DNA of 61,151 nt, filler included, from Dugesia japonica (taxonomy: Eukaryota): assembly GCA_001938525.1 (NCBI GenBank). It is 6 parts of 6 records of this genome, joined end to end, with 100 filler letters (N's around TTAATTAATTAA, not from the genome) between each part and the next. Parts side by side here need not be neighbours in the genome. Positions count along the whole stretch, not along the records: positions 19,410 to 28,592 come from MQRL01631597.1; 5 more parts are not named here. One strand, 5' to 3'. The notes beneath the pieces were generated by a model. The model was not told the DNA's origin and searched no databases. It saw only the letters and a list, made by a program, of their open reading frames with translations. Of the stretch, positions 19,410-28,592 are shown piece after piece. Both the position numbers and the translations under genes were made by a program. The first letter of the stretch is position 1; each line of letters opens with the position of its first letter.

Positions 19410-22388
19410 TCGAACCACTCCTCAGCATTCTGACTAATAATAAAATAGTATTCCATATAATAAAATTGCTGCTGGGTTACACTTTGATTAATTCCTATAT
19501 CTTCTTAGTCAAAAAATTCCATAGCGATAGGTTACCGAAAGAATTTTCTGCATTCATTAATAATGAATTTTAGAGTGGCAGATCACAGATAATTATTTGA
19601 TAAAGAACCTCCACGAATGTTGATAGATAGACTTTAGAATTCTGAGTTAATATTAACAAGTCATCGAAAGAGTAGATAAACCCAGTTACTTAATAGTGTG
19701 TGTGCAATAGTTAAATGAGTCAACTCATGTACTAACTAAAATTTTGTTTTTCGTGACAACATGCTAAGAGAGTGTGTCACACACCAACTCGCGTTGCATT
19801 ATCGCCAACAGCTAGAAGAAAAAAATCCCTAGGTAACCGTCACACGCGCAATTTGAAAATGTAATAAAAATAGCAATAGATAATTAATACCAGAAATGAT
19901 AAAATGGGGAATCTTATAAACTTCAGTATTAATAATAGTTCATCTAAGGACGTAATAAATTACGGCCCTCTTGACTAGTTACCTCAATAAATTTAGTTCT
20001 GAGTTATAAATATTGCGTTGAAAATTAATAGCTTTTCTTACGCCAATTTTATCTGACTAAGTGGGATTCATCCATAAAAAAAATATTTCTCCATGAATTA
20101 TCCGCGAAACAAATAGCGTAAATTAGTAATCATATAATATATCCGACCATATAACTTTCAATTGAAGGTCTGGTCCGTGAATTATCACTGAAATTTTATT
20201 TTTTTTTTCATTTAGCTTATGTCAGACGAATTACGAATTATCCTGAGAACGATAAGGAAGCAACGACGAGCAACCCGCCTAAAGCAATTAATTGTCCATT
20301 ACTTAACGAGAGGTTGAGTAGAGCACCCCGACGAAACTGACCTTCAGTGTTTTATTGAGATGTTTCCCCTAAAACCTAAGGTGGATATCGATGAGGAATA
20401 GCCATTTTAGCTAAAACCATGGTGAATTCCTTTCTTTAAAGAGTACTTAGACTAATTGTGATGTTATACTTCGAGTATGAATTAAAATCCGTGCTTTATT
20501 TTAATTTATTTTTTTTTAAAATATAATCTATTTAATTACCTAAATGCATTTCACTCTGATTAAATAAAAAATTCATTAGTTGTTATTATAGGAAATAAAC
20601 AAAACAATTATAGAATATAGATGGGAGGTATGTTTAGATGTTTATTCAGGAAGAACAACCTTTAAAAGATATCAAAACCCATATTACCGTGATGCCGGTG
20701 TTTTGGTTGATCACACCAATTTGCCTACCGAAATAGCAGATAATGAAAGACAATGGGACGCAACAGAACGGGCTGCTTATTATCATTGGCGTGGCCCGAG
20801 AAGAGACCGGGTCGCTACCCCACCAGCACCCCTTTCATTCAAACGGTCAGCAGAAATTCCATTGATAGAACGTGTGTGGATTGACGGCTCCTCGTCAGTG
20901 GGCCTTACTAGAAATCTCTTACCTCCCACATCGCAATTGACGTCCTTCATCCAAAATAATCTGTGGGGCGTTTGAAATGCGCTGGTTAGCAATAATGATG
21001 AAAACACTGAAGAAGAACACACTGTGTCGGTGTGAACTTTCTCTTTTGATTTAAGACCTAGAATAGAATGCTTTTCTCTCTGCTATTTTCGAAATTTAAT
21101 AATTAATGTCTTACAAAATTTGGTCTTATTCTCACACTATATCATTGTTAAGAACCGTAAAAATTACGCTATTTATATTTTAGTGCACTCATCGTTGAAT
21201 CGAACACAGGCCCCGACCAAAAAATTACGCGAAGATAGTGAAGATAAAAAAATTACTTGGGACCTGTATAAATTGGCTAAGAGACGGTGGGAAGCCGAGA
21301 TCGCAACCGCCAACGCTAAAATAAAGCGGTACAAAACGAAGTGCACAAATGTTCGCGAGAAAATGAAGGCGGTGCAAGATCAAGAGAGGGTCTTGGAAGG
21401 CCCAGGTAGAATCGTTCGCCGAGATTATCCGGTCCAGTCATGACCGTCAGAATAAACTGGTCAAAGATATCCTCATCTTAAAAACGAAATCTTATCTGGA
21501 ACCCCTTATGATTGATAAGGGCACCCAGATCAAACCTAATCCCCGTGTTTGATCACTATAAAAAATATATAAAATTTTGTACATTTTGATCTTGAGTTTC
21601 TATTNNNNNNNNNNNNNNNNNNNNNNNNNNNNNNNNNNNNNNNNNNNNNNNNNNTTTTGATCTTGAGTTTCTATTTCTGTTTACTTCGTTGATAATAAAT
21701 TCGTTAATATTGACATTCATTATACTCTATTAATGTTCGTAAATTTTAGTGCCACGAATTACCTTCCCGAACAGCCTTAGAAGATGTCACCGCATTCTGC
21801 GTCGCCTCCTTCTTGAAAGGCACCTGAAACGCAAAGCCGACAAAGCCTTATTAAAGCACCTCGCCCAACGGGACCAGTTTGATTAAAAAACTGGATTTAA
21901 TCATAAAGAAACAAAACAACCTTGCCATGCAGACAAAGGCTTTAGAAACAGAAAATAAACAATTATTGCAACGGAAAATTGAATTCCTAAAGCAATATAT
22001 TGCTGACTTATCACGTCAAATAGGTAATCCAAATGTAACGCAATGGGATGAGGACGATGACCTTGCAGCGTTCAATTTTGTATTGACTGAACCTGACCAA
22101 TGGCTAGATCCAGGAGCGCTGGATTTACTTCGAATAATTTTCTTTTAATAAAATATCGGTACTCAGAAATGCAAATCATTTTTCTTTTAATAATAACTAT
22201 AAGGGAAAAGTCAATGAACCCAAATATAAAGGTTTATTGGTGTTTACCTTCCATTAAGAGTAAGGTCAACCACCATAAACTGAAAACCTACCACAGGGAC
22301 GATAGGGTAAATTCTTGAAAGGGTTCCCCTGAGGGCTTTTTTTCCCAGCCACCTTTTCGTATCACTCGAATCAGGTGGGACCCCAACA
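19410..22388. mobile_element. Probable terminal part of a large LTR-type element carrying a decayed spliced + strand gene; interrupts the viral minor capsid gene
   Basis: Ends in ...GGGACCCCAACA (TGTTGGGG on minus) exactly where minor-capsid similarity stops. GC-richer exon-like blocks follow polypyrimidine-AG acceptors near 20216, 20591, 21184 and 21749. No RT or integrase is visible in this part. Confidence 0.4.
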
Positions 22389-22537
22389 GTAACATTAAAA
22401 ATAATATTATAACAACTAAAAGTTAATAAAGCCATTTCATAATCAGAGTCTAATTCTATTGGAAATTTTAAATTAACTTTAAAATCTGATCCCGGAGGGC
22501 CCCCTTCTTTACCAACAACTAAAAATTGATGAGACAT
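22389..22537 (-). pseudogene. Minor capsid (penton-like) protein, N-terminus only
   Basis: SDFKVNLKFPIELDSDYEMALLTFSCYNIIFNVT resembles the N-terminal pattern (F..PIEL...YE.AL.....YN...N.T) of Polinton-type minor capsids; truncated by an insertion at 22388. Confidence 0.7.
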
Positions 22538-22539
22538 TT

Positions 22540-23332
22540 TATCTATAAAAATACTTATTCTTATATATACATATTTTTCTCTGGTAAGTAGTTTTTGCTT
22601 TAATAATTCTTTACAAACTGATTTAATTTCTTGTTCTAAATTATTATGACCAGCTTTAACAGCAGAAATTTATAATGTTAATCTTTCAAATAAAGAAACT
22701 GGGTCATGGGGCTCTCTGGGATTAGGATTTAATCCTTCTCCTTTAATAGGAGTTTCTTTTATAGGAGTTTCTTTTTCAGAATTTTCACTAATAGATAAAG
22801 TCTTTTTCCTAGTTAAAAATTTATAATATTTATTATTGTGATGAAATATAATATTAAATTTATTTAAATAAATATCAATTGCTTCTGGATCATTACTTCC
22901 ATTTCCTAAAATTAAATTCATTAATTCTTCAGAATAAGGAATTNNNNNNNNNNNNNNNNNNNNNNNNNNNTTTCCATCTTCTTCAAATAAATATATTTCT
23001 GTTAGAGAACCTCTAAGATTAGGATAAATTATTTTTTGAAAGTTTTTACCATTAATAACGTCTGTTAAAAATATTGGTATAACTGTTGGTGTTTTTAAAA
23101 AATCAATATTAAAATTATTATGTGAATAAAATGGTTTTCTTTTCTCAAAAGGGTTAGAAGATTTATCCAAGTTTTCAATTGCTTTAATTGTGGGTTGTTG
23201 TTGAATAGTTAAATCAGCTTGTAAATTTCTTGATTCAATTACATTACCACTAAATAAATTATTATAATCATCTCGTGCTTTAATTAATTCTTTTAAAAGT
23301 TTTATTCTTTCTGTTACTTGTACAGTATCCAT
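22540..23332 (-). pseudogene. Conserved Polinton-type uncharacterised protein (premature stop at 22670)
   Basis: C-terminal IKGEGL..DPVSLFERLTL*ISAVKAGHNNLEQEIKSVCKELL continues in frame past the stop. It resembles the DP..L.ERL.L......AG.....EI....EL motif of the gene that precedes the minor capsid in related elements. Confidence 0.65.
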
Positions 23333-23858
23333 TTTTAAAAGAATTTACATAGGGTTTTAAATATAATCCATTTCTTTTTATTTTAACTTTAATTCCATTT
23401 TTAAAGTTTTTAGTAATCATTATTAATTCAGGATTGTCTAAACTATTTTTCAAATATTTATGAATTGAACTTCCTTGATATGGTTTTAAGTAAAGTCCTG
23501 ATCCAGAACTTGTTTTATTTGTTTCTAACTTATTTACTTCTAATTTATTTTCAAGTTCCTTTTTCTGTAATTCAACTAATTCAATTTCTTTTTGTTTTTT
23601 AATAGCAACTCTAGAATTACTAACTGTACTTGCAATTCCAGTGGCAAAACCAGCAGTAGAAGCTAAATCAGCTATAATTGCTGGTATTGCTGCTAGAAAA
23701 GCAAATCTACCTTCATGTATTTTTTTTGTTGCTATTTTCTTTTTTATTTCTTCTTTAACTTGTTTACCAATCCAATAGTTTTTTCCATTAATTTTAATAG
23801 ATTTAGATTTATTTGAATTTACCAAATTAATTAATTCTTGTTCTGAAACAGAAGACAT
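23280..23858 (-). CDS. Putative virion core/membrane-active protein
   Basis: Basic N-terminus, hydrophobic helix FAFLAAIPAIIADLASTAGFATGIASTV after HEGR, coiled coil, and duplicated GLYLKPY motif (GSGLYLKPY, RNGLYLKPY). Confidence 0.6.
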   Translation of the reverse strand: MSSVSEQELINLVNSNKSKSIKINGKNYWIGKQVKEEIKKKIATKKIHEGRFAFLAAIPAIIADLASTAGFATGIASTVSNSRVAIKKQKEIELVELQKKELENKLEVNKLETNKTSSGSGLYLKPYQGSSIHKYLKNSLDNPELIMITKNFKNGIKVKIKRNGLYLKPYVNSFKNGYCTSNRKNKTFKRIN

Positions 23859-23979
23859 TTTATTTACTTGTAATTTGAAAATAATTCAATTTCTCTTCTC
23901 CTCTCAATTTAAGAGGTAGGAGGATTTTAAAGAGTAAGGAGGATTTTCAAAGAGGTGAAATCCTAGAGAGTCTTATAAA

Positions 23980-24733
23980 TTACTCTTCTTTCTCCTCCTC
24001 AAATAAATTATCAATTAATTCATCTGCTTCTCTATCTAAATAGAAATAATTATATTTAGTTTTCCAATGTAAATTAACTTCATAATCATATTCCATTTTA
24101 CTAGAAAAAATGTTACTAAACAAATCATAATAAACATTATCTTTATCAGTTTTGTTTAATTTAAAAAATATAAAACAATTCGAATTATTTCGAATAGACT
24201 TTTTATCCAAATAAAAATATGTTTGAGAAATGTAAATTACATTACAATTAACATGTCTTCCTCTAGTAAAATAACTTTTCTGAATTTNNNNNNNNNNNNN
24301 NNNNNNNNNNNNNNNNNNNNNNNNNNNNNNNNNNNNNNNNNNNNNNNNNNNNNNNNNNNNNNNNNNNNNNNNNNNNNNNNNNNNNNNNNNNNNNNNNNTT
24401 AAAAGAATACTTTTTTAAAAACCATTGAATTACTTCAAATGGTGTTATTAAAGAATTAGGAATTATATTTTGGTGTTCAAAAATAAAAATTATATCTTCT
24501 TTTGTTAATCAATTTTCAAAACCATGATATAATAATTGTAATTCAAATTGGTTTATAGTTGTTGAATAAATTATTAAATTATCATAATCTAAAAACCCTG
24601 GAGTTAATAACATTTTCATTAATAAAACATTTTTACCTGAGCCTGAAGAACCAATTATTAATAATCTAAAATTAGATGGAAAGATTTTATTATTAAAGAT
24701 GTTTTTATTTTTACTCCAGATCAATTGAGACAT
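23980..24733 (-). pseudogene. A32/FtsK-HerA family DNA-packaging ATPase (internal stop and N gap)
   Basis: FRLLIIGSSGSGK Walker A; after the gap FTRGRHVNCNVIYISQTYFYLDKKSIRNNSNCFIFFK, the GRH..SQ.Y....IR.N signature of Polinton/NCLDV packaging ATPases. Confidence 0.9.
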
Positions 24734-24873
24734 TTTTTTTTAATAAAAAATCAAAGAATTCTTTAATCCTCATAAATAATTTTCTTTATTACACAATCTA
24801 ATACATTTGCACTAAACAATTCCAAACAAGTATTAGATTTTCCAAAATATTGGGTGAATATTTTAATTATTTC

Positions 24874-25101
24874 TTATGTTGTTTCATTAAACCTTTCTTT
24901 ACCATTATATTTATTTTTAAAATAATCTGAAACTTGTTGTGGACAAACAGGTTTGAGTTCTTTAAGAGTTTCTTTTAATTCTTCTTTCAGGATTTCTTTT
25001 GTAATTTCTTTTAATTTATTTTTTGGTATTTCATTTGAAGTTTCTTTTATAGTTTCTTTTAAAGATTGATTTAAAATAAAATTAAAAGAGTTATCATCCA
25101 T
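24874..25101 (-). CDS. Small hypothetical viral protein with LKE repeats
   Basis: ATG ORF packed between integrase and ATPase on the same strand; may be frameshifted at the 3' end. Confidence 0.45.
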   Translation of the reverse strand: MDDNSFNFILNQSLKETIKETSNEIPKNKLKEITKEILKEELKETLKELKPVCPQQVSDYFKNKYNGKERFNETT

Positions 25102-25122
25102 TTAATTTATTAATTTTAAATA

Positions 25123-26322
25123 TTATAAAACAGTTTTCTGTAATTCATTATCATAAAATCTACCTAGAATTTTTTCATTGTCTAAATTAGTAATTCCATA
25201 AGTAAAAGGTTTTGTTTTATAAACTCGAGTAACTAGAAATATTTCATTTGTCCATTTAGCTGTTAAACCTTTTTCAAACTTATATTTATATTTAAAGATT
25301 CTAACTTTATCACCAATTTTAAATTTCTGTTTAAATATTATATTATCATTTTCAGTATTATGTTGATTTATTATTTCTTTAATTTAATCTGGATTTTCAC
25401 TAGCTTGTTTTGGAGTTGTTTTTATAGAACTATGAATTGTATTATTATAATAATTTACAATTTTATCTATAAAGTTTTTATCCCAGTTTAGATTATCAAC
25501 TAGAGTAAAATGTTTAAATAATTTATTTTTAAATGTTTTATTAAATCTTTCTATAACAACTGCTTTCCCCTTGTTTTCAGGTGAATACAAATTAATATTA
25601 TTTTCTTTACAAAAAGATTTAAATAATCTATTATAAAATTCACTTCCTTTATCAACCCATAAATTATTTGGAATTTTATTATTTTTTTCAATTATATTTT
25701 CAAATGAATTTGTTATTGATTAACCTGTTTTATTATTACATATTTCTATAAATGCATATCGAGAATATAAATCAATAACTGTTAGTATTATTTTCTTATT
25801 ATGAAAGATTAAATCTGCAGACCAAGTTTCATCAATTTCATTAATTATTTTTAATATTTTTATCAATGGGAAAAGTCTTCGCTTCTTTCAGACTTAAACT
25901 AGCACCCAAAATAATTTTACCTTTCATTGCTAATTTTACTAAACTTCTTTTAATTTTTTCATTAATACTAGGATTAGAAATATTATTCAAGTCATGAATT
26001 AAATTAATATCAGCTAAATGTCTATCTTTTAAATCTTCTGATTTATAAGATAAATCCTGTTTTAAAGCAGCTGCATCAACTCTATTTATTGGTTCTTCTC
26101 CAGGTTTTGGGTTATTATTTTCATCTAATCTTAAATCTAATCTTGTTCCAGGTCCAGTGTAATTGTGTTTAAATAAATGTCTTTCTCCTGGATATTTTTC
26201 CAAAGTAAATGGTTTTAAAATTGCACTTGTTAATTTAGAAGATTGTAAATCACCTCCGGTTTTATTACATATTTTATAATGTCTAGCTTGATTTTTTCTA
26301 AGTAATATTTTTTTACAATTTA
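25123..26322 (-). pseudogene. Zn-finger + parvovirus-type phospholipase A2 + Polinton-type retroviral integrase, copy A
   Basis: CKKILLRKNQARHYKIC; HNYTGPGT..PINRVDAAALKQDLSY (Ca loop YxGPG; catalytic HD mutated to QD); DETWSADL, ILTVIDLYSRYA, LWVDKGSEFYN, KAVVIERFNKT (D,D,E), FKIGDKVRI, FEKG..KWTNEIF, GRFYDNELQK*. The start lies in an N gap. Confidence 0.9.
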
Positions 26323-26396
26323 NNNNNNNNNNNNNNNNNNNNNNNNNNNNNNNNNNNNNNNNNNNNNNNNNNNNNNNNNNNNNNNNNNNNNNNNNT

Positions 26397-27001
26397 TTAT
26401 TTTAAATCTAATCCTTTTTTATTTTCAATCATTACTATTTTACAATTTTCTAATTTCATTTCTATATGTTTTTCTTCTAAAATACACCAATAAATATTTC
26501 CTTTAAAATCAGTATCTTCAGTTATATGTAAAGTTATAATTACATTATTAATATTTAGTCTATCGTCTTGAGCACTTACATCAAAACAAAAGAATGGGTA
26601 CAAAATCCTGATAATTCTCCATATTCTTTTTTATAAGATAAACCAGTTGTTATAAAATTTAACGTTGTAGATATAACTCATGGTTCTTTAATTATTTCTA
26701 CATCTGTGGAACCTAAACTTAATTTCATTAATTTAAATAAAATAGGAAACCAATTATTTTCTAAAGTTATTTTTTCATAATGTTTATCTGTTTCACCAAA
26801 TTCTAGAGTTATGTAATAATATAACATTGAATTACAAATATCTAAAGGAGTTGTAGTTAGTAAAGATTGAAAAGTTNTATNTCCTGAAGACATTAAATTA
26901 TTAATTGAACCAGAAGTTGGTTNAATCTATAAAACATCATTTTTTAATAACAAAAGATTAAAATTAATATTATTATCTATATTTAGTTTTGTTGTTTCCA
27001 T
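26397..27001 (-). pseudogene. Double jelly-roll major capsid protein, copy A (large internal deletion)
   Basis: METTKLNIDNN..PLDICNSMLYY..ITLENNWFPILF..LGSTDVEII..KEYGELSG joined directly to YPFFCFDVSAQDD..YWCILEEKH; homologous to copy B. Confidence 0.85.
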
Positions 27002-27103
27002 TTTACTAAGATAAAATTTAAAATCTTTTTTGAATTCCTCAAATTACAAAGAAAAACTCGAAAACTCATAATACAATTAATAAAAGCAAATAAGCATATA
27101 ACG

Positions 27104-27293
27104 AGTAATGGAGAAATGAGGGATTTACACCATGGAATTATCATTTTAATATGCATTGGCATTAACAATTAGCAATTAACTATATTAAACTTTATTTTCC
27201 TGATAACAAACTTTGTTTTAGTACTAACGTTTATGCCTTTTGCTCGCTTTAGAGTGTACCCCCATGGCGTAAATCCCTCATTTTTCCATTACT
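27104..27293. repeat. 32-bp inverted repeat (27104-27135 / 27262-27293, 2 mismatches) upstream of the capsid gene
   Basis: AGTAATGGAGAAATGAGGGATTTACACCATGG vs CCATGGCGTAAATCCCTCATTTTTCCATTACT. Confidence 0.85.
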
Positions 27294-27294
27294 A

Positions 27295-27712
27295 TCCATA
27301 CCATGCATAAATATCTTGTAATAATATCTTTAAAAATATCAAGAGTGCCCATAACATGCATAACTTTCTTGTAATATTATCTTAAAAATATCAAGACTGT
27401 CCATATTTTGTAATAATATCTTACAAAATATCAAGACTGCCCATACCATGCATAAATTCCTTAAAAAATATCAAGATTGCCCATCTTATGCTACATATAG
27501 AGACTCTGCATGCAAAATATAAAGACTGCCCGATATCATGTAATAATATCTTAAAAATATCAAGTCTGTTCATAAAATGCATAAATATCTTGTAATAATA
27601 TCTTAAAAAATATCAAGACTGCCCAAACCATGCATAAATAGCTTTAAAAATATCAAGATTGTGAATATTATGCAAAATATAGAGACTCTGCATGCAAAAT
27701 ATCAAGACTAAC
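27295..27712. repeat. Degenerate tandem array with core AAAATATCAAGACTGCCCA (about 9 copies plus 2 variants)
   Basis: Core recurs near 27333, 27386, 27426, 27466, 27514, 27554, 27607, 27647 and 27696, interleaved with CATGCATAAA and TGTAATAATATCTT modules. Confidence 0.85.
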
Positions 27713-27799
27713 CCGTCTCTTACATAAAAAAGTAATTTAATTAAATTAGATTTAATTTAATTTAATTTATTTGCAATAAAAAATTTCTCCCCATTGAAA

Positions 27800-27910
27800 T
27801 GAAAAATTTCATGCCAAAATATTTTTTTTTTAAATTTCCAGCCAAAAAGATTTTTTTTGAATTCCCAGCCAAAAAAATTTTTTTAAATTTCCCGCCAAAA
27901 ATGTTTTTAA
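27800..27910 (-). promoter_or_regulatory. Four ~27-bp tandem units with E2F / CDE-CHR-like sites
   Basis: TTTCATGCCAAAA (27807), TTTCCAGCCAAAA (27835), TTCCCAGCCAAAA (27862), TTTCCCGCCAAAA (27888). The last reads GGCGG-GAAA-TTTAAA on the minus strand. Confidence 0.5.
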
Positions 27911-28592
27911 AAATATTATGACTCCCCTCTTCCCAAGTCAAAAATCTTACAAAACAACACTTCAGTCTTTTCTTTCAGTCTTTTAAACACACACAAACAC
28001 ACACACAATCACAACTTGAACTACTTTTTAAAAAGCACCCTAACAACCTAAACACAATGAAAATTTAAAATTTTAAAATACACACACACACCTTCAGGAT
28101 CAAAAAAACTTTGATCCCATCAAATATTTTTTGATCCCAAAAATCTTAGAAAAAAATAAATCACAAAAATCATGGTTAAAAAAACGCAACTACACTATAT
28201 TTTCTGAGAGAACCAAGACATTTTGTACAAGAAACCCTATATAAAAAATGTTCAGAATTTTATTCTGAGTTCAACAATACCAAATTTGAAATTTTACAAT
28301 AAAAATTGAATGAAAATGTTTGAACCAAAATTTAGGATTTTGGAATTTCGCGAGCAAAACCTCGATCGTTCAAATCCGAATTCGAAGAAGCTTTTTTCGT
28401 ATTCATAACGACCAATTAAAAGCCTACATTCTTGGATCTTTCAGATTGCTGGATCACTTCGTCGGCGGAAGGAGTGACTGATCCATTGCTGCACTATCTA
28501 TCTATTCGATAAAAATTGGAAAAATAAATCCATCAATTTCCTCAAATTTTCAGTCTCCATGCATATTTACAGAAATTATTGATTACGTAATC

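What the first reader, a model, noticed from the sequence alone, without database searches (positions are those of the whole stretch)
22389..27910. Compact endogenous capsid-encoding virus (Polinton/adintovirus-like) with no visible polymerase or protease
Seen: within ~5.5 kb, all on one strand and intronless: major capsid > Zn/PLA2/integrase > small ORF > A32 ATPase > core-like protein > conserved ORF > minor capsid. The capsid gene begins ~100 bp from an inverted repeat and repeat array, with no gene in between. Established: Polintons/Mavericks/adintoviruses combine a double jelly-roll capsid, penton, packaging ATPase and rve integrase with protein-primed polB and an adenain-like protease. 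Inference: this is an endogenous virus lineage of this host, possibly a polB-less minimal or satellite form. Caveat: the distal end is cut by an insertion at 22388, so polB and protease could lie in the missing part.
Basis: partly seen in the sequence, partly recalled or inferred. Interest (0 to 1): 0.9.

Follow-up and report, generated by a model that had tools for sequence, protein, structure and literature searches.

The report
Decayed, cut-off endogenous Polinton-like virus
This is a broken and cut-off fossil of a capsid-encoding, integrase-bearing DNA virus of the Polinton/Maverick kind; its small size and lack of a polymerase come from damage and truncation, so nothing shows a new minimal virus.

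Summary
The virus-like block is real. It lies on the minus strand from 22389 to about 27940, at 22% GC against 30-36% in its neighbours. The 'core-like', 'conserved' and 'minor capsid' calls have no homology support.

The copy is damaged. The capsid gene has lost about 222 of about 425 codons and carries two stops and a frame change. The integrase has two stops and the ATPase one. The last gene is cut mid-frame at 22388, where GC jumps from 0.20 to 0.52. The absence of polymerase and protease is therefore uninformative, and 'compact, polB-less or satellite' is not supported.

Intact capsid relatives (408-459 aa) occur only in unnamed metagenome and SRA assemblies. They match Pfam DJR-like_dom and fold like the PBCV-1, iridovirus and virophage capsids.

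PLA2 genes and polB-less Maverick-Polintons are already described.

Verdict: a new member of a known kind, of modest interest.

The parts
27296..27940 (.). Repeat-rich end of the element. It holds a 40/53-nt tandem array (27296-27709), TAATT x7 (27733-27769) and a 27-nt unit x3.9 (27804-27908). This is probably the terminal repeat region; the exact end of the element is not defined.
   Evidence: TRF scores 131-169; direct-repeat families D1-D6; sequence read.
27104..27293 (.). Inverted repeat with 32-nt arms (94% complementary) and a 126-nt spacer, lying between the repeat array and the capsid gene.
   Evidence: I1. The DNA fold gives -36.8 kcal/mol, z -7.5, and 0 of 200 shuffles fold as well.
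26397..27001 (-). Major capsid protein gene of double-jelly-roll type, broken. It has 2 in-frame stops, 1 frame change and 1 internal deletion of about 222 of about 425 codons. Only the N-terminal third and the C-terminal 60 or so residues remain.
   Evidence: Representative search. tblastn with 9 relatives gives 2 HSPs in 2 frames and 222-266 query residues uncovered. 19 of the 21 strongly conserved columns that are covered are kept, and 31 of 52 lie in the missing part. The relatives match PF21738 and have a DJR fold.
25844..26322 (-). ORF with a parvovirus-type phospholipase A2 domain. It is open for 159 codons from the edge of the gap 26323-26395 and no start codon is visible. The catalytic motif is not fully canonical, read by eye.
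   Evidence: Pfam PF08398: E 2.3e-9 and 4.4e-9, 37-38 bits against a cut-off of 23.9. Translation.
25126..25887 (-). rve (retrovirus-type) integrase, made of a catalytic core plus a C-terminal domain of about 85 residues. It is broken by 2 in-frame stops. It has no ATG of its own before the core, and its frame differs from that of the PLA2 ORF it overlaps.
   Evidence: Collinear Pfam matches: rve positions 6-45 and 53-94, rve_3 positions 8-62. PDB matches to the HTLV-2 and PFV integrase cores, E 0.011-0.6. Stop count.
24874..25101 (-). Small ORF of 75 aa, rich in K and E, built on 12/36-nt repeats. Function unknown.
   Evidence: D5. No significant family.
23980..24733 (-). Genome-packaging ATPase (A32/FtsK-like P-loop), broken by 1 in-frame stop. 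The middle of the gene is unread (gap 24288-24398) and the two sides are in different frames as written.
   Evidence: Pox_A32 E 3.5e-4, 20.6 bits against a cut-off of 22.8. phrog_2666 'head and packaging' is matched by both halves collinearly, E 2.7e-3 and 6e-5.
23280..23858 (-). Intact 192-aa ORF. It is basic (pI 10), with one hydrophobic segment and a motif of about 7 residues present twice. It is a candidate membrane-active or core virion protein by features only.
   Evidence: Composition. No homolog. The only sub-threshold match is Polyoma_coat2, E 0.08.
22670..23332 (-). Open 220-codon ORF running across the gap 22944-22970. Function unknown. It overlaps the previous ORF by 53 nt.
   Evidence: No homolog, no family, and AF2 gave pLDDT 42.
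22389..22537 (-). First 49 or so codons of the next ORF, truncated at the breakpoint. It is in the same frame as the 220-codon ORF and the 44 open codons between them, so the two may be one gene with one stop.
   Evidence: GC step 0.52 to 0.20. Null for the open spacer about 4%. No family.
19410..22388 (.). Neighbour: unrelated sequence of higher GC (0.36) that ends at the breakpoint. It is either a nested mobile-element insertion or a rearrangement. It contains no virus-like gene.
   Evidence: tblastn with capsid relatives finds nothing here.

Best explanation
The block is one end of an integrated genome of a Polinton/Maverick-type virus-like element with a double-jelly-roll capsid. It is now an inert fossil.

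Inferred working of the intact ancestor, from the known roles of the families:
- The rve integrase inserted the linear DNA into the host chromosome.
- The capsid protein and a vertex protein built an icosahedral shell.
- The A32/FtsK-like ATPase packed the DNA.
- The PLA2 domain breached the endosomal membrane at entry, as in parvoviruses.
- The basic, hydrophobic 192-aa protein may have been a membrane-active core protein.

Shown here: the gene identities, the one-strand compact layout, the repeat-rich end, and the damage. The damage comprises 5 in-frame stops of mixed type, at least one frame change, loss of more than half of the capsid gene, and truncation of the last gene at 22388.

The replication module, whether protein-primed polB or something else, and any protease would lie beyond the breakpoint. 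They are simply not in view.
For: - Composition: GC 0.22 against 0.30-0.36 in the neighbours, with a step from 0.52 to 0.20 exactly at 22388/22389 inside an open frame.
- Capsid gene: family match E 1e-10 to 6e-26. The relatives match PF21738 at 48-96 bits against a cut-off of 27. The AF2 model has pLDDT 85.8. Foldseek probability is 1.00 to the PBCV-1, SGIV, Sputnik and mavirus capsids and to giant-virus, virophage, adintovirus and MELD-virus capsids.
- Capsid decay: about 222 residues are missing, but 19 of the 21 covered conserved columns are kept.
- Other genes: PLA2, integrase, ATPase.
- In-frame stops: TAA 2, TAG 1, TGA 2. The mixed types point to decay and not to a variant genetic code.
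- Start context: 5 of 6 ATGs are preceded by AAA.
- Literature: insect Mavericks and Alpha adintoviruses carry a PLA2 gene, an integrase with a chromo-like tail, an A32-like ATPase, a protease and polB (PMC5803895, PMC8502044, PMC3671162).
Against: - The capsid family shows no sequence similarity to any named or solved capsid. A profile search of PDB found nothing, and fold matches are at about 10% identity.
- The capsid (about 425 aa) is much shorter than the one adintovirus capsid-like hit (663 aa).
- Two intact ORFs (192 and 220 aa) have no detectable homologs.
- The host is unidentified, the second end is not seen, and no other copy was examined.
- Placement within the supergroup and the nature of the missing half are therefore open.
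Confidence: 0.8

Rival explanations
1. The lineage truly lacks protein-primed polB. It would be a Tlr1-like, PLV-like or 'group 2' Maverick-Polinton with a helicase-primase or helicase-polymerase module, or none. The missing part would then never have held polB or adenain.
For: - No polB or protease remnant anywhere in 19410-28592.
- The short capsid of about 425 aa is nearer in size to PLV and MELD-type capsids than to the adintovirus hit.
- Such polB-less forms are documented (PMC4642659; bioRxiv 10.64898/2026.06.19.733378).
Against: - The absence is uninformative, because the element is cut mid-gene.
- PLA2 together with an rve integrase and an A32-like ATPase is the gene set of polB-bearing insect Mavericks (PMC5803895).
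- PLVs mostly lack rve (PMC4642659).
Confidence: 0.3
2. One reading: a complete, compact element of about 5.5 kb, either a minimal virus or a satellite, that relies on a helper for replication and maturation.
For: Tight one-strand gene packing with overlapping ORFs. Two ORFs are still intact.
Against: - The last ORF is cut at a compositional step.
- Only one repeat-bearing end is present, and no inverted copy of it exists in the piece.
- The capsid gene lacks more than half of its fold.
- The integrase and the ATPase carry stops.
Confidence: 0.03
3. An assembly chimera or contaminant: AT-rich virus-like DNA from another organism, or from a free virus, wrongly scaffolded into this sequence.
For: Strong compositional contrast with both flanks. 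The piece holds four assembly gaps and single Ns.
Against: - Both junctions lie in uninterrupted sequence.
- Stops, a deletion and a truncation are the marks of a non-functional genomic copy and would not be expected in a replicating virus.
- A GT microsatellite and repeats flank the block directly.
Confidence: 0.05

Closest known systems
Insect Mavericks / Alpha adintoviruses (Sf Maverick 1 and 2, Mayetiola-class; PMC5803895, PMC8502044)
   Same: A parvovirus-type PLA2 gene, an rve integrase with an extra C-terminal domain, an A32-like packaging ATPase and a double-jelly-roll capsid, in a compact intronless layout that integrates into a genome.
   Different: - No polB or adenain is in view, because the element is truncated.
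- The capsid is about 425 aa, with only fold-level likeness (11% identity) to the adintovirus entry in BFVD.
- The PLA2 ORF abuts and overlaps the integrase and does not carry a pX-like tail.
- Two ORFs have no homologs.
'Group 2' Maverick-Polintons, Tlr1 of Tetrahymena, and Polinton-like viruses (PMC4642659; bioRxiv 10.64898/2026.06.19.733378)
   Same: The capsid, ATPase and, in some members, rve integrase module without protein-primed polB. Some carry phospholipase genes. Capsid size is similar to that of PLV and MELD-type capsids.
   Different: No helicase, primase or tyrosine recombinase is seen here. PLVs generally lack rve. The standard genetic code and the in-frame stop types exclude a ciliate-code reading.
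Unnamed metagenomic capsid clade (P0002, P0006, P0008, P0010, P0019-P0037; Pfam PF21738 DJR-like_dom)
   Same: A direct sequence family of the window's capsid gene, at 34-46% identity over the retained parts. All members are AT-rich in composition.
   Different: They are full length (408-459 aa) and apparently intact, whereas the window's copy is a remnant. Their hosts and gene neighbourhoods are unknown, and I did not fetch them.
Parvovirus VP1u phospholipase A2 domain (Pfam PF08398)
   Same: Domain-level match above Pfam's threshold. The presumed role is membrane breach at entry.
   Different: Here the domain sits in a dsDNA element next to the integrase and not on a capsid protein. The catalytic motif is not fully canonical, so activity is doubtful in this copy.

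Membership tests
Polinton / Maverick (Polintoviricetes) | Protein-primed family B DNA polymerase | tested here: inconclusive
   None was found in 19410-28592 (Pfam on all ORF pieces). The element is cut at 22388, so the absence says nothing.
Polinton / Maverick (Polintoviricetes) | Retrovirus-type (rve) integrase | tested here: met
   Collinear rve and rve_3 matches in one frame, each under the gathering score alone. PDB matches to retroviral integrase cores. The gene carries 2 stops.
Polinton / Maverick (Polintoviricetes) | Double-jelly-roll major capsid protein | tested here: met
   The window's remnant belongs to a family whose intact members match PF21738 and fold as DJR capsids. The window's own copy lacks most of the fold.
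Polinton / Maverick (Polintoviricetes) | Single-jelly-roll penton (minor capsid) protein | tested here: inconclusive
Polinton / Maverick (Polintoviricetes) | A32/FtsK-like packaging ATPase | tested here: met
   Pox_A32 is the best Pfam match, just under cut-off. Both halves match a PHROG packaging family collinearly. The Walker B region is unread because it lies in the gap.
Polinton / Maverick (Polintoviricetes) | Adenain-like maturation protease | tested here: inconclusive
   Not found in the piece. The truncation makes the absence uninformative.
Polinton / Maverick (Polintoviricetes) | Terminal inverted repeats and a 6-bp target-site duplication | not testable with these tools
   Only one end is present. 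It is repeat-rich, but there is no partner to compare.
Adintoviridae | Sequence-level kinship of the virion proteins (hexon, penton) and polB with the Alpha or Beta reference lineages | tested here: not met
   No named adintovirus protein came back from the sequence searches. There is only a fold-level match at 11% identity. polB is not available.
Adintoviridae | PLA2-domain virion gene (PLA2X) of Alpha-class virion modules | tested here: inconclusive
   The PLA2 domain is present. No pX-like tail was recognised. Here the ORF abuts the integrase.
Polinton-like viruses (PLV) | Capsid, penton and ATPase module without protease and usually without an rve integrase | tested here: not met
   An rve integrase is present. 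Protease status is unknown.
Parvovirus-type PLA2 (PF08398) | Domain match and an intact catalytic motif | tested here: inconclusive
   The domain match is above cut-off (37-38 bits against 23.9). The calcium-loop motif is present, but the catalytic motif is not fully canonical when read by eye. No aligned reference was available.

The most novel reading that the evidence does not exclude
The window preserves a fossil of a so far unnamed, family-level lineage of Polinton-like viruses. Its features would be:
- a short (about 425 aa) DJR capsid, known otherwise only from unannotated metagenome assemblies;
- a PLA2 entry domain that was part of the integrase polypeptide (N-terminal Cys/His region, then PLA2, then rve core, then a C-terminal domain), so that the integrase travelled in the virion;
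- replication without protein-primed polB.

Two hints point to the fusion: the integrase core has no start codon of its own, and its open frame overlaps the end of the PLA2 ORF.
Probability: 0.12. Interest if true: 0.6.

Novelty: new member of a known kind. Interest (0 to 1): 0.3.

Why it matters
- It adds one more endogenous Polinton/Maverick-type fossil.
- It links a metagenome-only capsid clade to a chromosomal integration, which shows that the clade integrates into a eukaryotic genome.
- It is also a cautionary case: small size and missing hallmark genes in a short-read scaffold can come from truncation and decay, without any new biology.
- The possible PLA2-integrase fusion and the two orphan ORFs are the only parts worth a specialist's second look.

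Tried and rejected
- Variant genetic code: rejected. The in-frame stops are of all three types, and the capsid gene ends where its relatives end.
- Homolog searches for the 220-aa and 192-aa ORFs: no hits. Pfam and PHROGs found nothing.
- Single-sequence AF2 of the 220-aa ORF gave pLDDT 42 and is unusable. I ran no fold search on it.
- PDB sequence searches:
  - The PLA2 ORF and the ATPase pieces gave only noise or generic P-loop matches.
  - The capsid profile against PDB found nothing.
- Rfam found no RNA family.
- P0001 and P0011, both listed, are Ig and Sushi repeat proteins and are false positives.
- Cluster look-up of 10 capsid relatives gave no names, accessions or hosts.
- An exact look-up of the window's own 192-aa ORF with zero flank, meant only to learn the host, found nothing on record.
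- Shared promoter motif upstream of the six starts: none, beyond the AAA-ATG context.
- Classifying the left neighbour as an LTR element: no second repeat and no protein family, so I left it open.
- Not done on purpose: fetching DNA or gene neighbourhoods of the relatives.

Candour
- Searches printed raw frame translations in which stops are visible.
- To search broken genes 'piece by piece', some tool references necessarily ended next to stops.
- I made no list of break places, and I joined or repaired nothing.
- I entered none in a tool and used none as evidence.


Full report
WHAT IS THERE

Within the piece 19410-28592, the stretch from 22389 to about 27940 is an AT-rich block. Its GC is 0.22 for 22389-27010. 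The left neighbour has GC 0.36 and the right flank 0.30. All of its reading frames lie on the minus strand. The longest open stretch is 215-220 codons, whereas 200 shuffles of the same letters gave a mean of 78 and a maximum of 144. Five of the six ATG starts are preceded by AAA. The block is real coding, or recently coding, sequence and not chance.

THE ASSEMBLY GAPS (tested first, as asked)

- Gap 24288-24398 lies inside the packaging-ATPase gene. The piece before it matches positions 307-342 of PHROG family 2666 and the piece after it matches positions 447-525, out of 555. The two sides are therefore collinear parts of one gene, and the unread stretch has about the estimated length. As written the two sides are in different frames. 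Because the gap length is only an estimate, that cannot be read as a frameshift.
- Gap 22944-22970 lies inside a 220-codon ORF that stays open in the same frame as written. No homolog exists to check collinearity.
- Gap 26323-26395 lies between the capsid gene's stop and the PLA2 ORF. That ORF is open right up to the gap edge and shows no start codon. Its start, and the continuity of the two sides, are unknown.
- I neither filled nor looked up any of these gaps.

GENES IN ORDER ON THE MINUS STRAND

1. Repeat-rich end:
   - a 27-nt unit x3.9;
   - TAATT x7;
   - a 40/53-nt array of about 400 bp;
   - a 32-nt inverted repeat with a 126-nt spacer, which folds strongly (z -7.5).

2. Capsid gene, about 100 bp further on.
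   - An 80-residue open piece searched against 1.84 billion representatives found 17 true relatives. The full-length ones are 408-448 aa, and the query matched their residues 26-112 or thereabouts.
   - A second search from the best relative found 19 proteins of 370-459 aa, all carrying PF21738. I confirmed this at 48-96 bits against a cut-off of 27.
   - An AlphaFold model of relative P0002, built with a 23-row alignment, reached pLDDT 85.8 and pTM 0.87.
   - Foldseek matched it at probability 1.00 to the PBCV-1 Vp54, Singapore grouper iridovirus, Sputnik, mavirus and faustovirus capsids. It also matched giant-virus, virophage, adintovirus, adomavirus and 'MELD virus' capsids in BFVD, always at about 10% identity.
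   - A profile of the family finds no solved capsid by sequence.
   - So the family is a double-jelly-roll capsid, but it is not close to any named one.

3. PLA2-domain ORF: Pfam PF08398, E 2e-9, above cut-off. No zinc-finger family matched the 47 residues before the domain.

4. rve integrase, in one frame.
   - Its pieces match rve positions 6-45 and 53-94 and rve_3 positions 8-62.
   - There are weak PDB matches to the HTLV-2 and foamy-virus integrase cores.
   - An 85-residue C-terminal domain follows, with no family match.

5. A 75-aa ORF rich in K and E, built on short repeats.

6. Packaging ATPase: Pox_A32 is the best Pfam match, E 3.5e-4, just under cut-off. The PHROG packaging matches are described under the gaps.

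7. Intact 192-aa ORF. It is basic (pI 10), with one hydrophobic segment and a short motif present twice. It has no homolog.

8. Open 220-codon ORF with no homolog, family or usable fold.

9. The first 49 codons of a further ORF, cut at 22388.

THE DAMAGE (counts only)

- Capsid gene:
  - two in-frame stops;
  - one frame change;
  - one internal deletion of about 222 of about 425 codons.
  - Nine relatives each align in two pieces, with 222-266 residues uncovered and nothing elsewhere in the piece.
  - The remaining pieces keep 19 of the 21 strongly conserved family columns that they cover, and 31 of the 52 such columns fall in the missing part.
- Integrase: two in-frame stops.
- ATPase: one in-frame stop.
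- PLA2 ORF: no stop in view, but its start is unseen and its catalytic motif is not fully canonical, read by eye.
- Last ORF: truncated.
- The 220-codon ORF, the 44 open codons after its stop and the truncated ORF share one frame. They may be one gene with one more stop. An open interval that long occurs in about 4% of intervals on the non-coding strand.
- The five counted stops are TAA x2, TAG x1 and TGA x2, which means decay and not a variant genetic code.

THE BREAKPOINT

- GC in 60-nt windows goes from 0.52 (22329-22388) to 0.20 (22389-22448) inside an open frame.
- The left neighbour (19410-22388) has short plus-strand ORFs with no family match, no second copy of its end, and no virus-like gene.
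- It is either a nested mobile-element insertion or a rearrangement. I could not classify it.

WHAT IT IS

The gene set is a DJR capsid, a parvovirus-type PLA2, an rve integrase with an extra C-terminal domain and an A32-like ATPase, packed tightly on one strand next to a repeat-rich end. This is the virion and integration half of a Polinton/Maverick-type element.

- Insect Mavericks carry exactly such PLA2, INT (with a chromo domain) and A32-like ATP genes, together with PRO and POLB (PMC5803895).
- PLA2 genes mark Alpha adintovirus virion modules (PMC8502044) and were noted in beetle and aphid Mavericks earlier (PMC3671162).
- What remains here is an inert fossil.
- How the intact ancestor worked is inference from those families:
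  - integrase-mediated insertion;
  - an icosahedral shell filled by the ATPase;
  - PLA2-assisted entry.

'No visible polymerase or protease' is true of the piece. It is uninformative, because the element is cut mid-gene and only one end is present. 'Compact, minimal or satellite' is contradicted by the truncation and by the gutted capsid gene.

polB-less relatives are already on record:
- Tlr1 and the PLVs (PMC4642659);
- 'group 2' Maverick-Polintons of animal genomes, in which polB is often replaced by helicase-polymerase or primase modules (bioRxiv 10.64898/2026.06.19.733378).

WHAT IS MILDLY NEW

- The capsid clade has no named member and is held only by ENA, JGI and Logan assemblies, on contigs of 1.4-16.7 kb.
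- The window's copy is 34-46% identical to them.
- The integrase core has no ATG of its own, and its open frame overlaps the end of the PLA2 ORF in another frame. A former PLA2-integrase fusion is therefore possible but untested.
- Two ORFs are orphans.

LIMITS

- The host is unidentified. An exact look-up of the window's own 192-aa ORF with zero flank found nothing.
- I did not fetch DNA or gene neighbourhoods of the capsid relatives by look-up or pattern. Their hosts are unknown, and the finding likens the element to animal viruses. That step is referred.
The PLA2-integrase, ATPase and truncated ORF could therefore not be searched for intact relatives.

CANDOUR

- Searches printed raw translations in which stops are visible.
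- Some tool references ended next to stops, so that broken genes could be searched piece by piece.
- I compiled no list of break places.
- A few motif-like strings that I recalled from memory in private reasoning were never entered in a tool or used as evidence.

VERDICT

This is a real virus-derived locus, but an ordinary one: a decayed, truncated endogenous member of the Polinton/Maverick supergroup. Interest 0.3.

Noticed in passing
window 27104-27293: A 32-nt inverted repeat (94% complementary, 126-nt spacer) sits between the repeat array and the capsid gene and folds as a very stable hairpin (z -7.5). It could be a small foldback or MITE-like insertion, or a regulatory element. I saw no clear target-site duplication.
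   Followed up: partly
window 22389-23332: The 220-codon ORF, the 44 open codons after its stop and the truncated last ORF are all in one frame. They may be a single larger gene with one in-frame stop and not two genes.
   Followed up: partly
window 25844-25887: The integrase core has no ATG of its own, and its open frame overlaps the end of the PLA2 ORF in a different frame. This hints at a former PLA2-integrase fusion protein.
   Followed up: partly
window 21584-21675: The 21 nt on both sides of the assembly gap 21605-21654 in the left neighbour are identical. I only noted this; nothing was filled.
   Followed up: no
window 23911-23955: A 19-nt purine/pyrimidine-rich unit repeated 2.3 times, with a short palindrome, lies just upstream of the 192-aa ORF. 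It is much richer in GC than its surroundings.
   Followed up: no
window 24955-25074: The small 75-aa ORF is built on 12/24/36-nt tandem repeats, giving a periodic peptide rich in K, E and T. It has no family match.
   Followed up: no
window 27985-28139: The right flank holds an (AC)n microsatellite and a 20-nt unit x2. It is probably host DNA, and the exact end of the element is not defined.
   Followed up: no
BFVD hit R9XLG5: The structural hit with the highest sequence identity (16%) to the capsid model is an uncharacterised protein of Cotesia sesamiae Mombasa bracovirus. A Maverick is known to have moved into a bracovirus (reference 21 of PMC3671162).
   Followed up: no
P0001, P0011: The top-scoring 4385-aa hit and a 1142-aa hit of the exhaustive search are Ig and Sushi repeat proteins. 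They are compositional false positives.
   Followed up: yes
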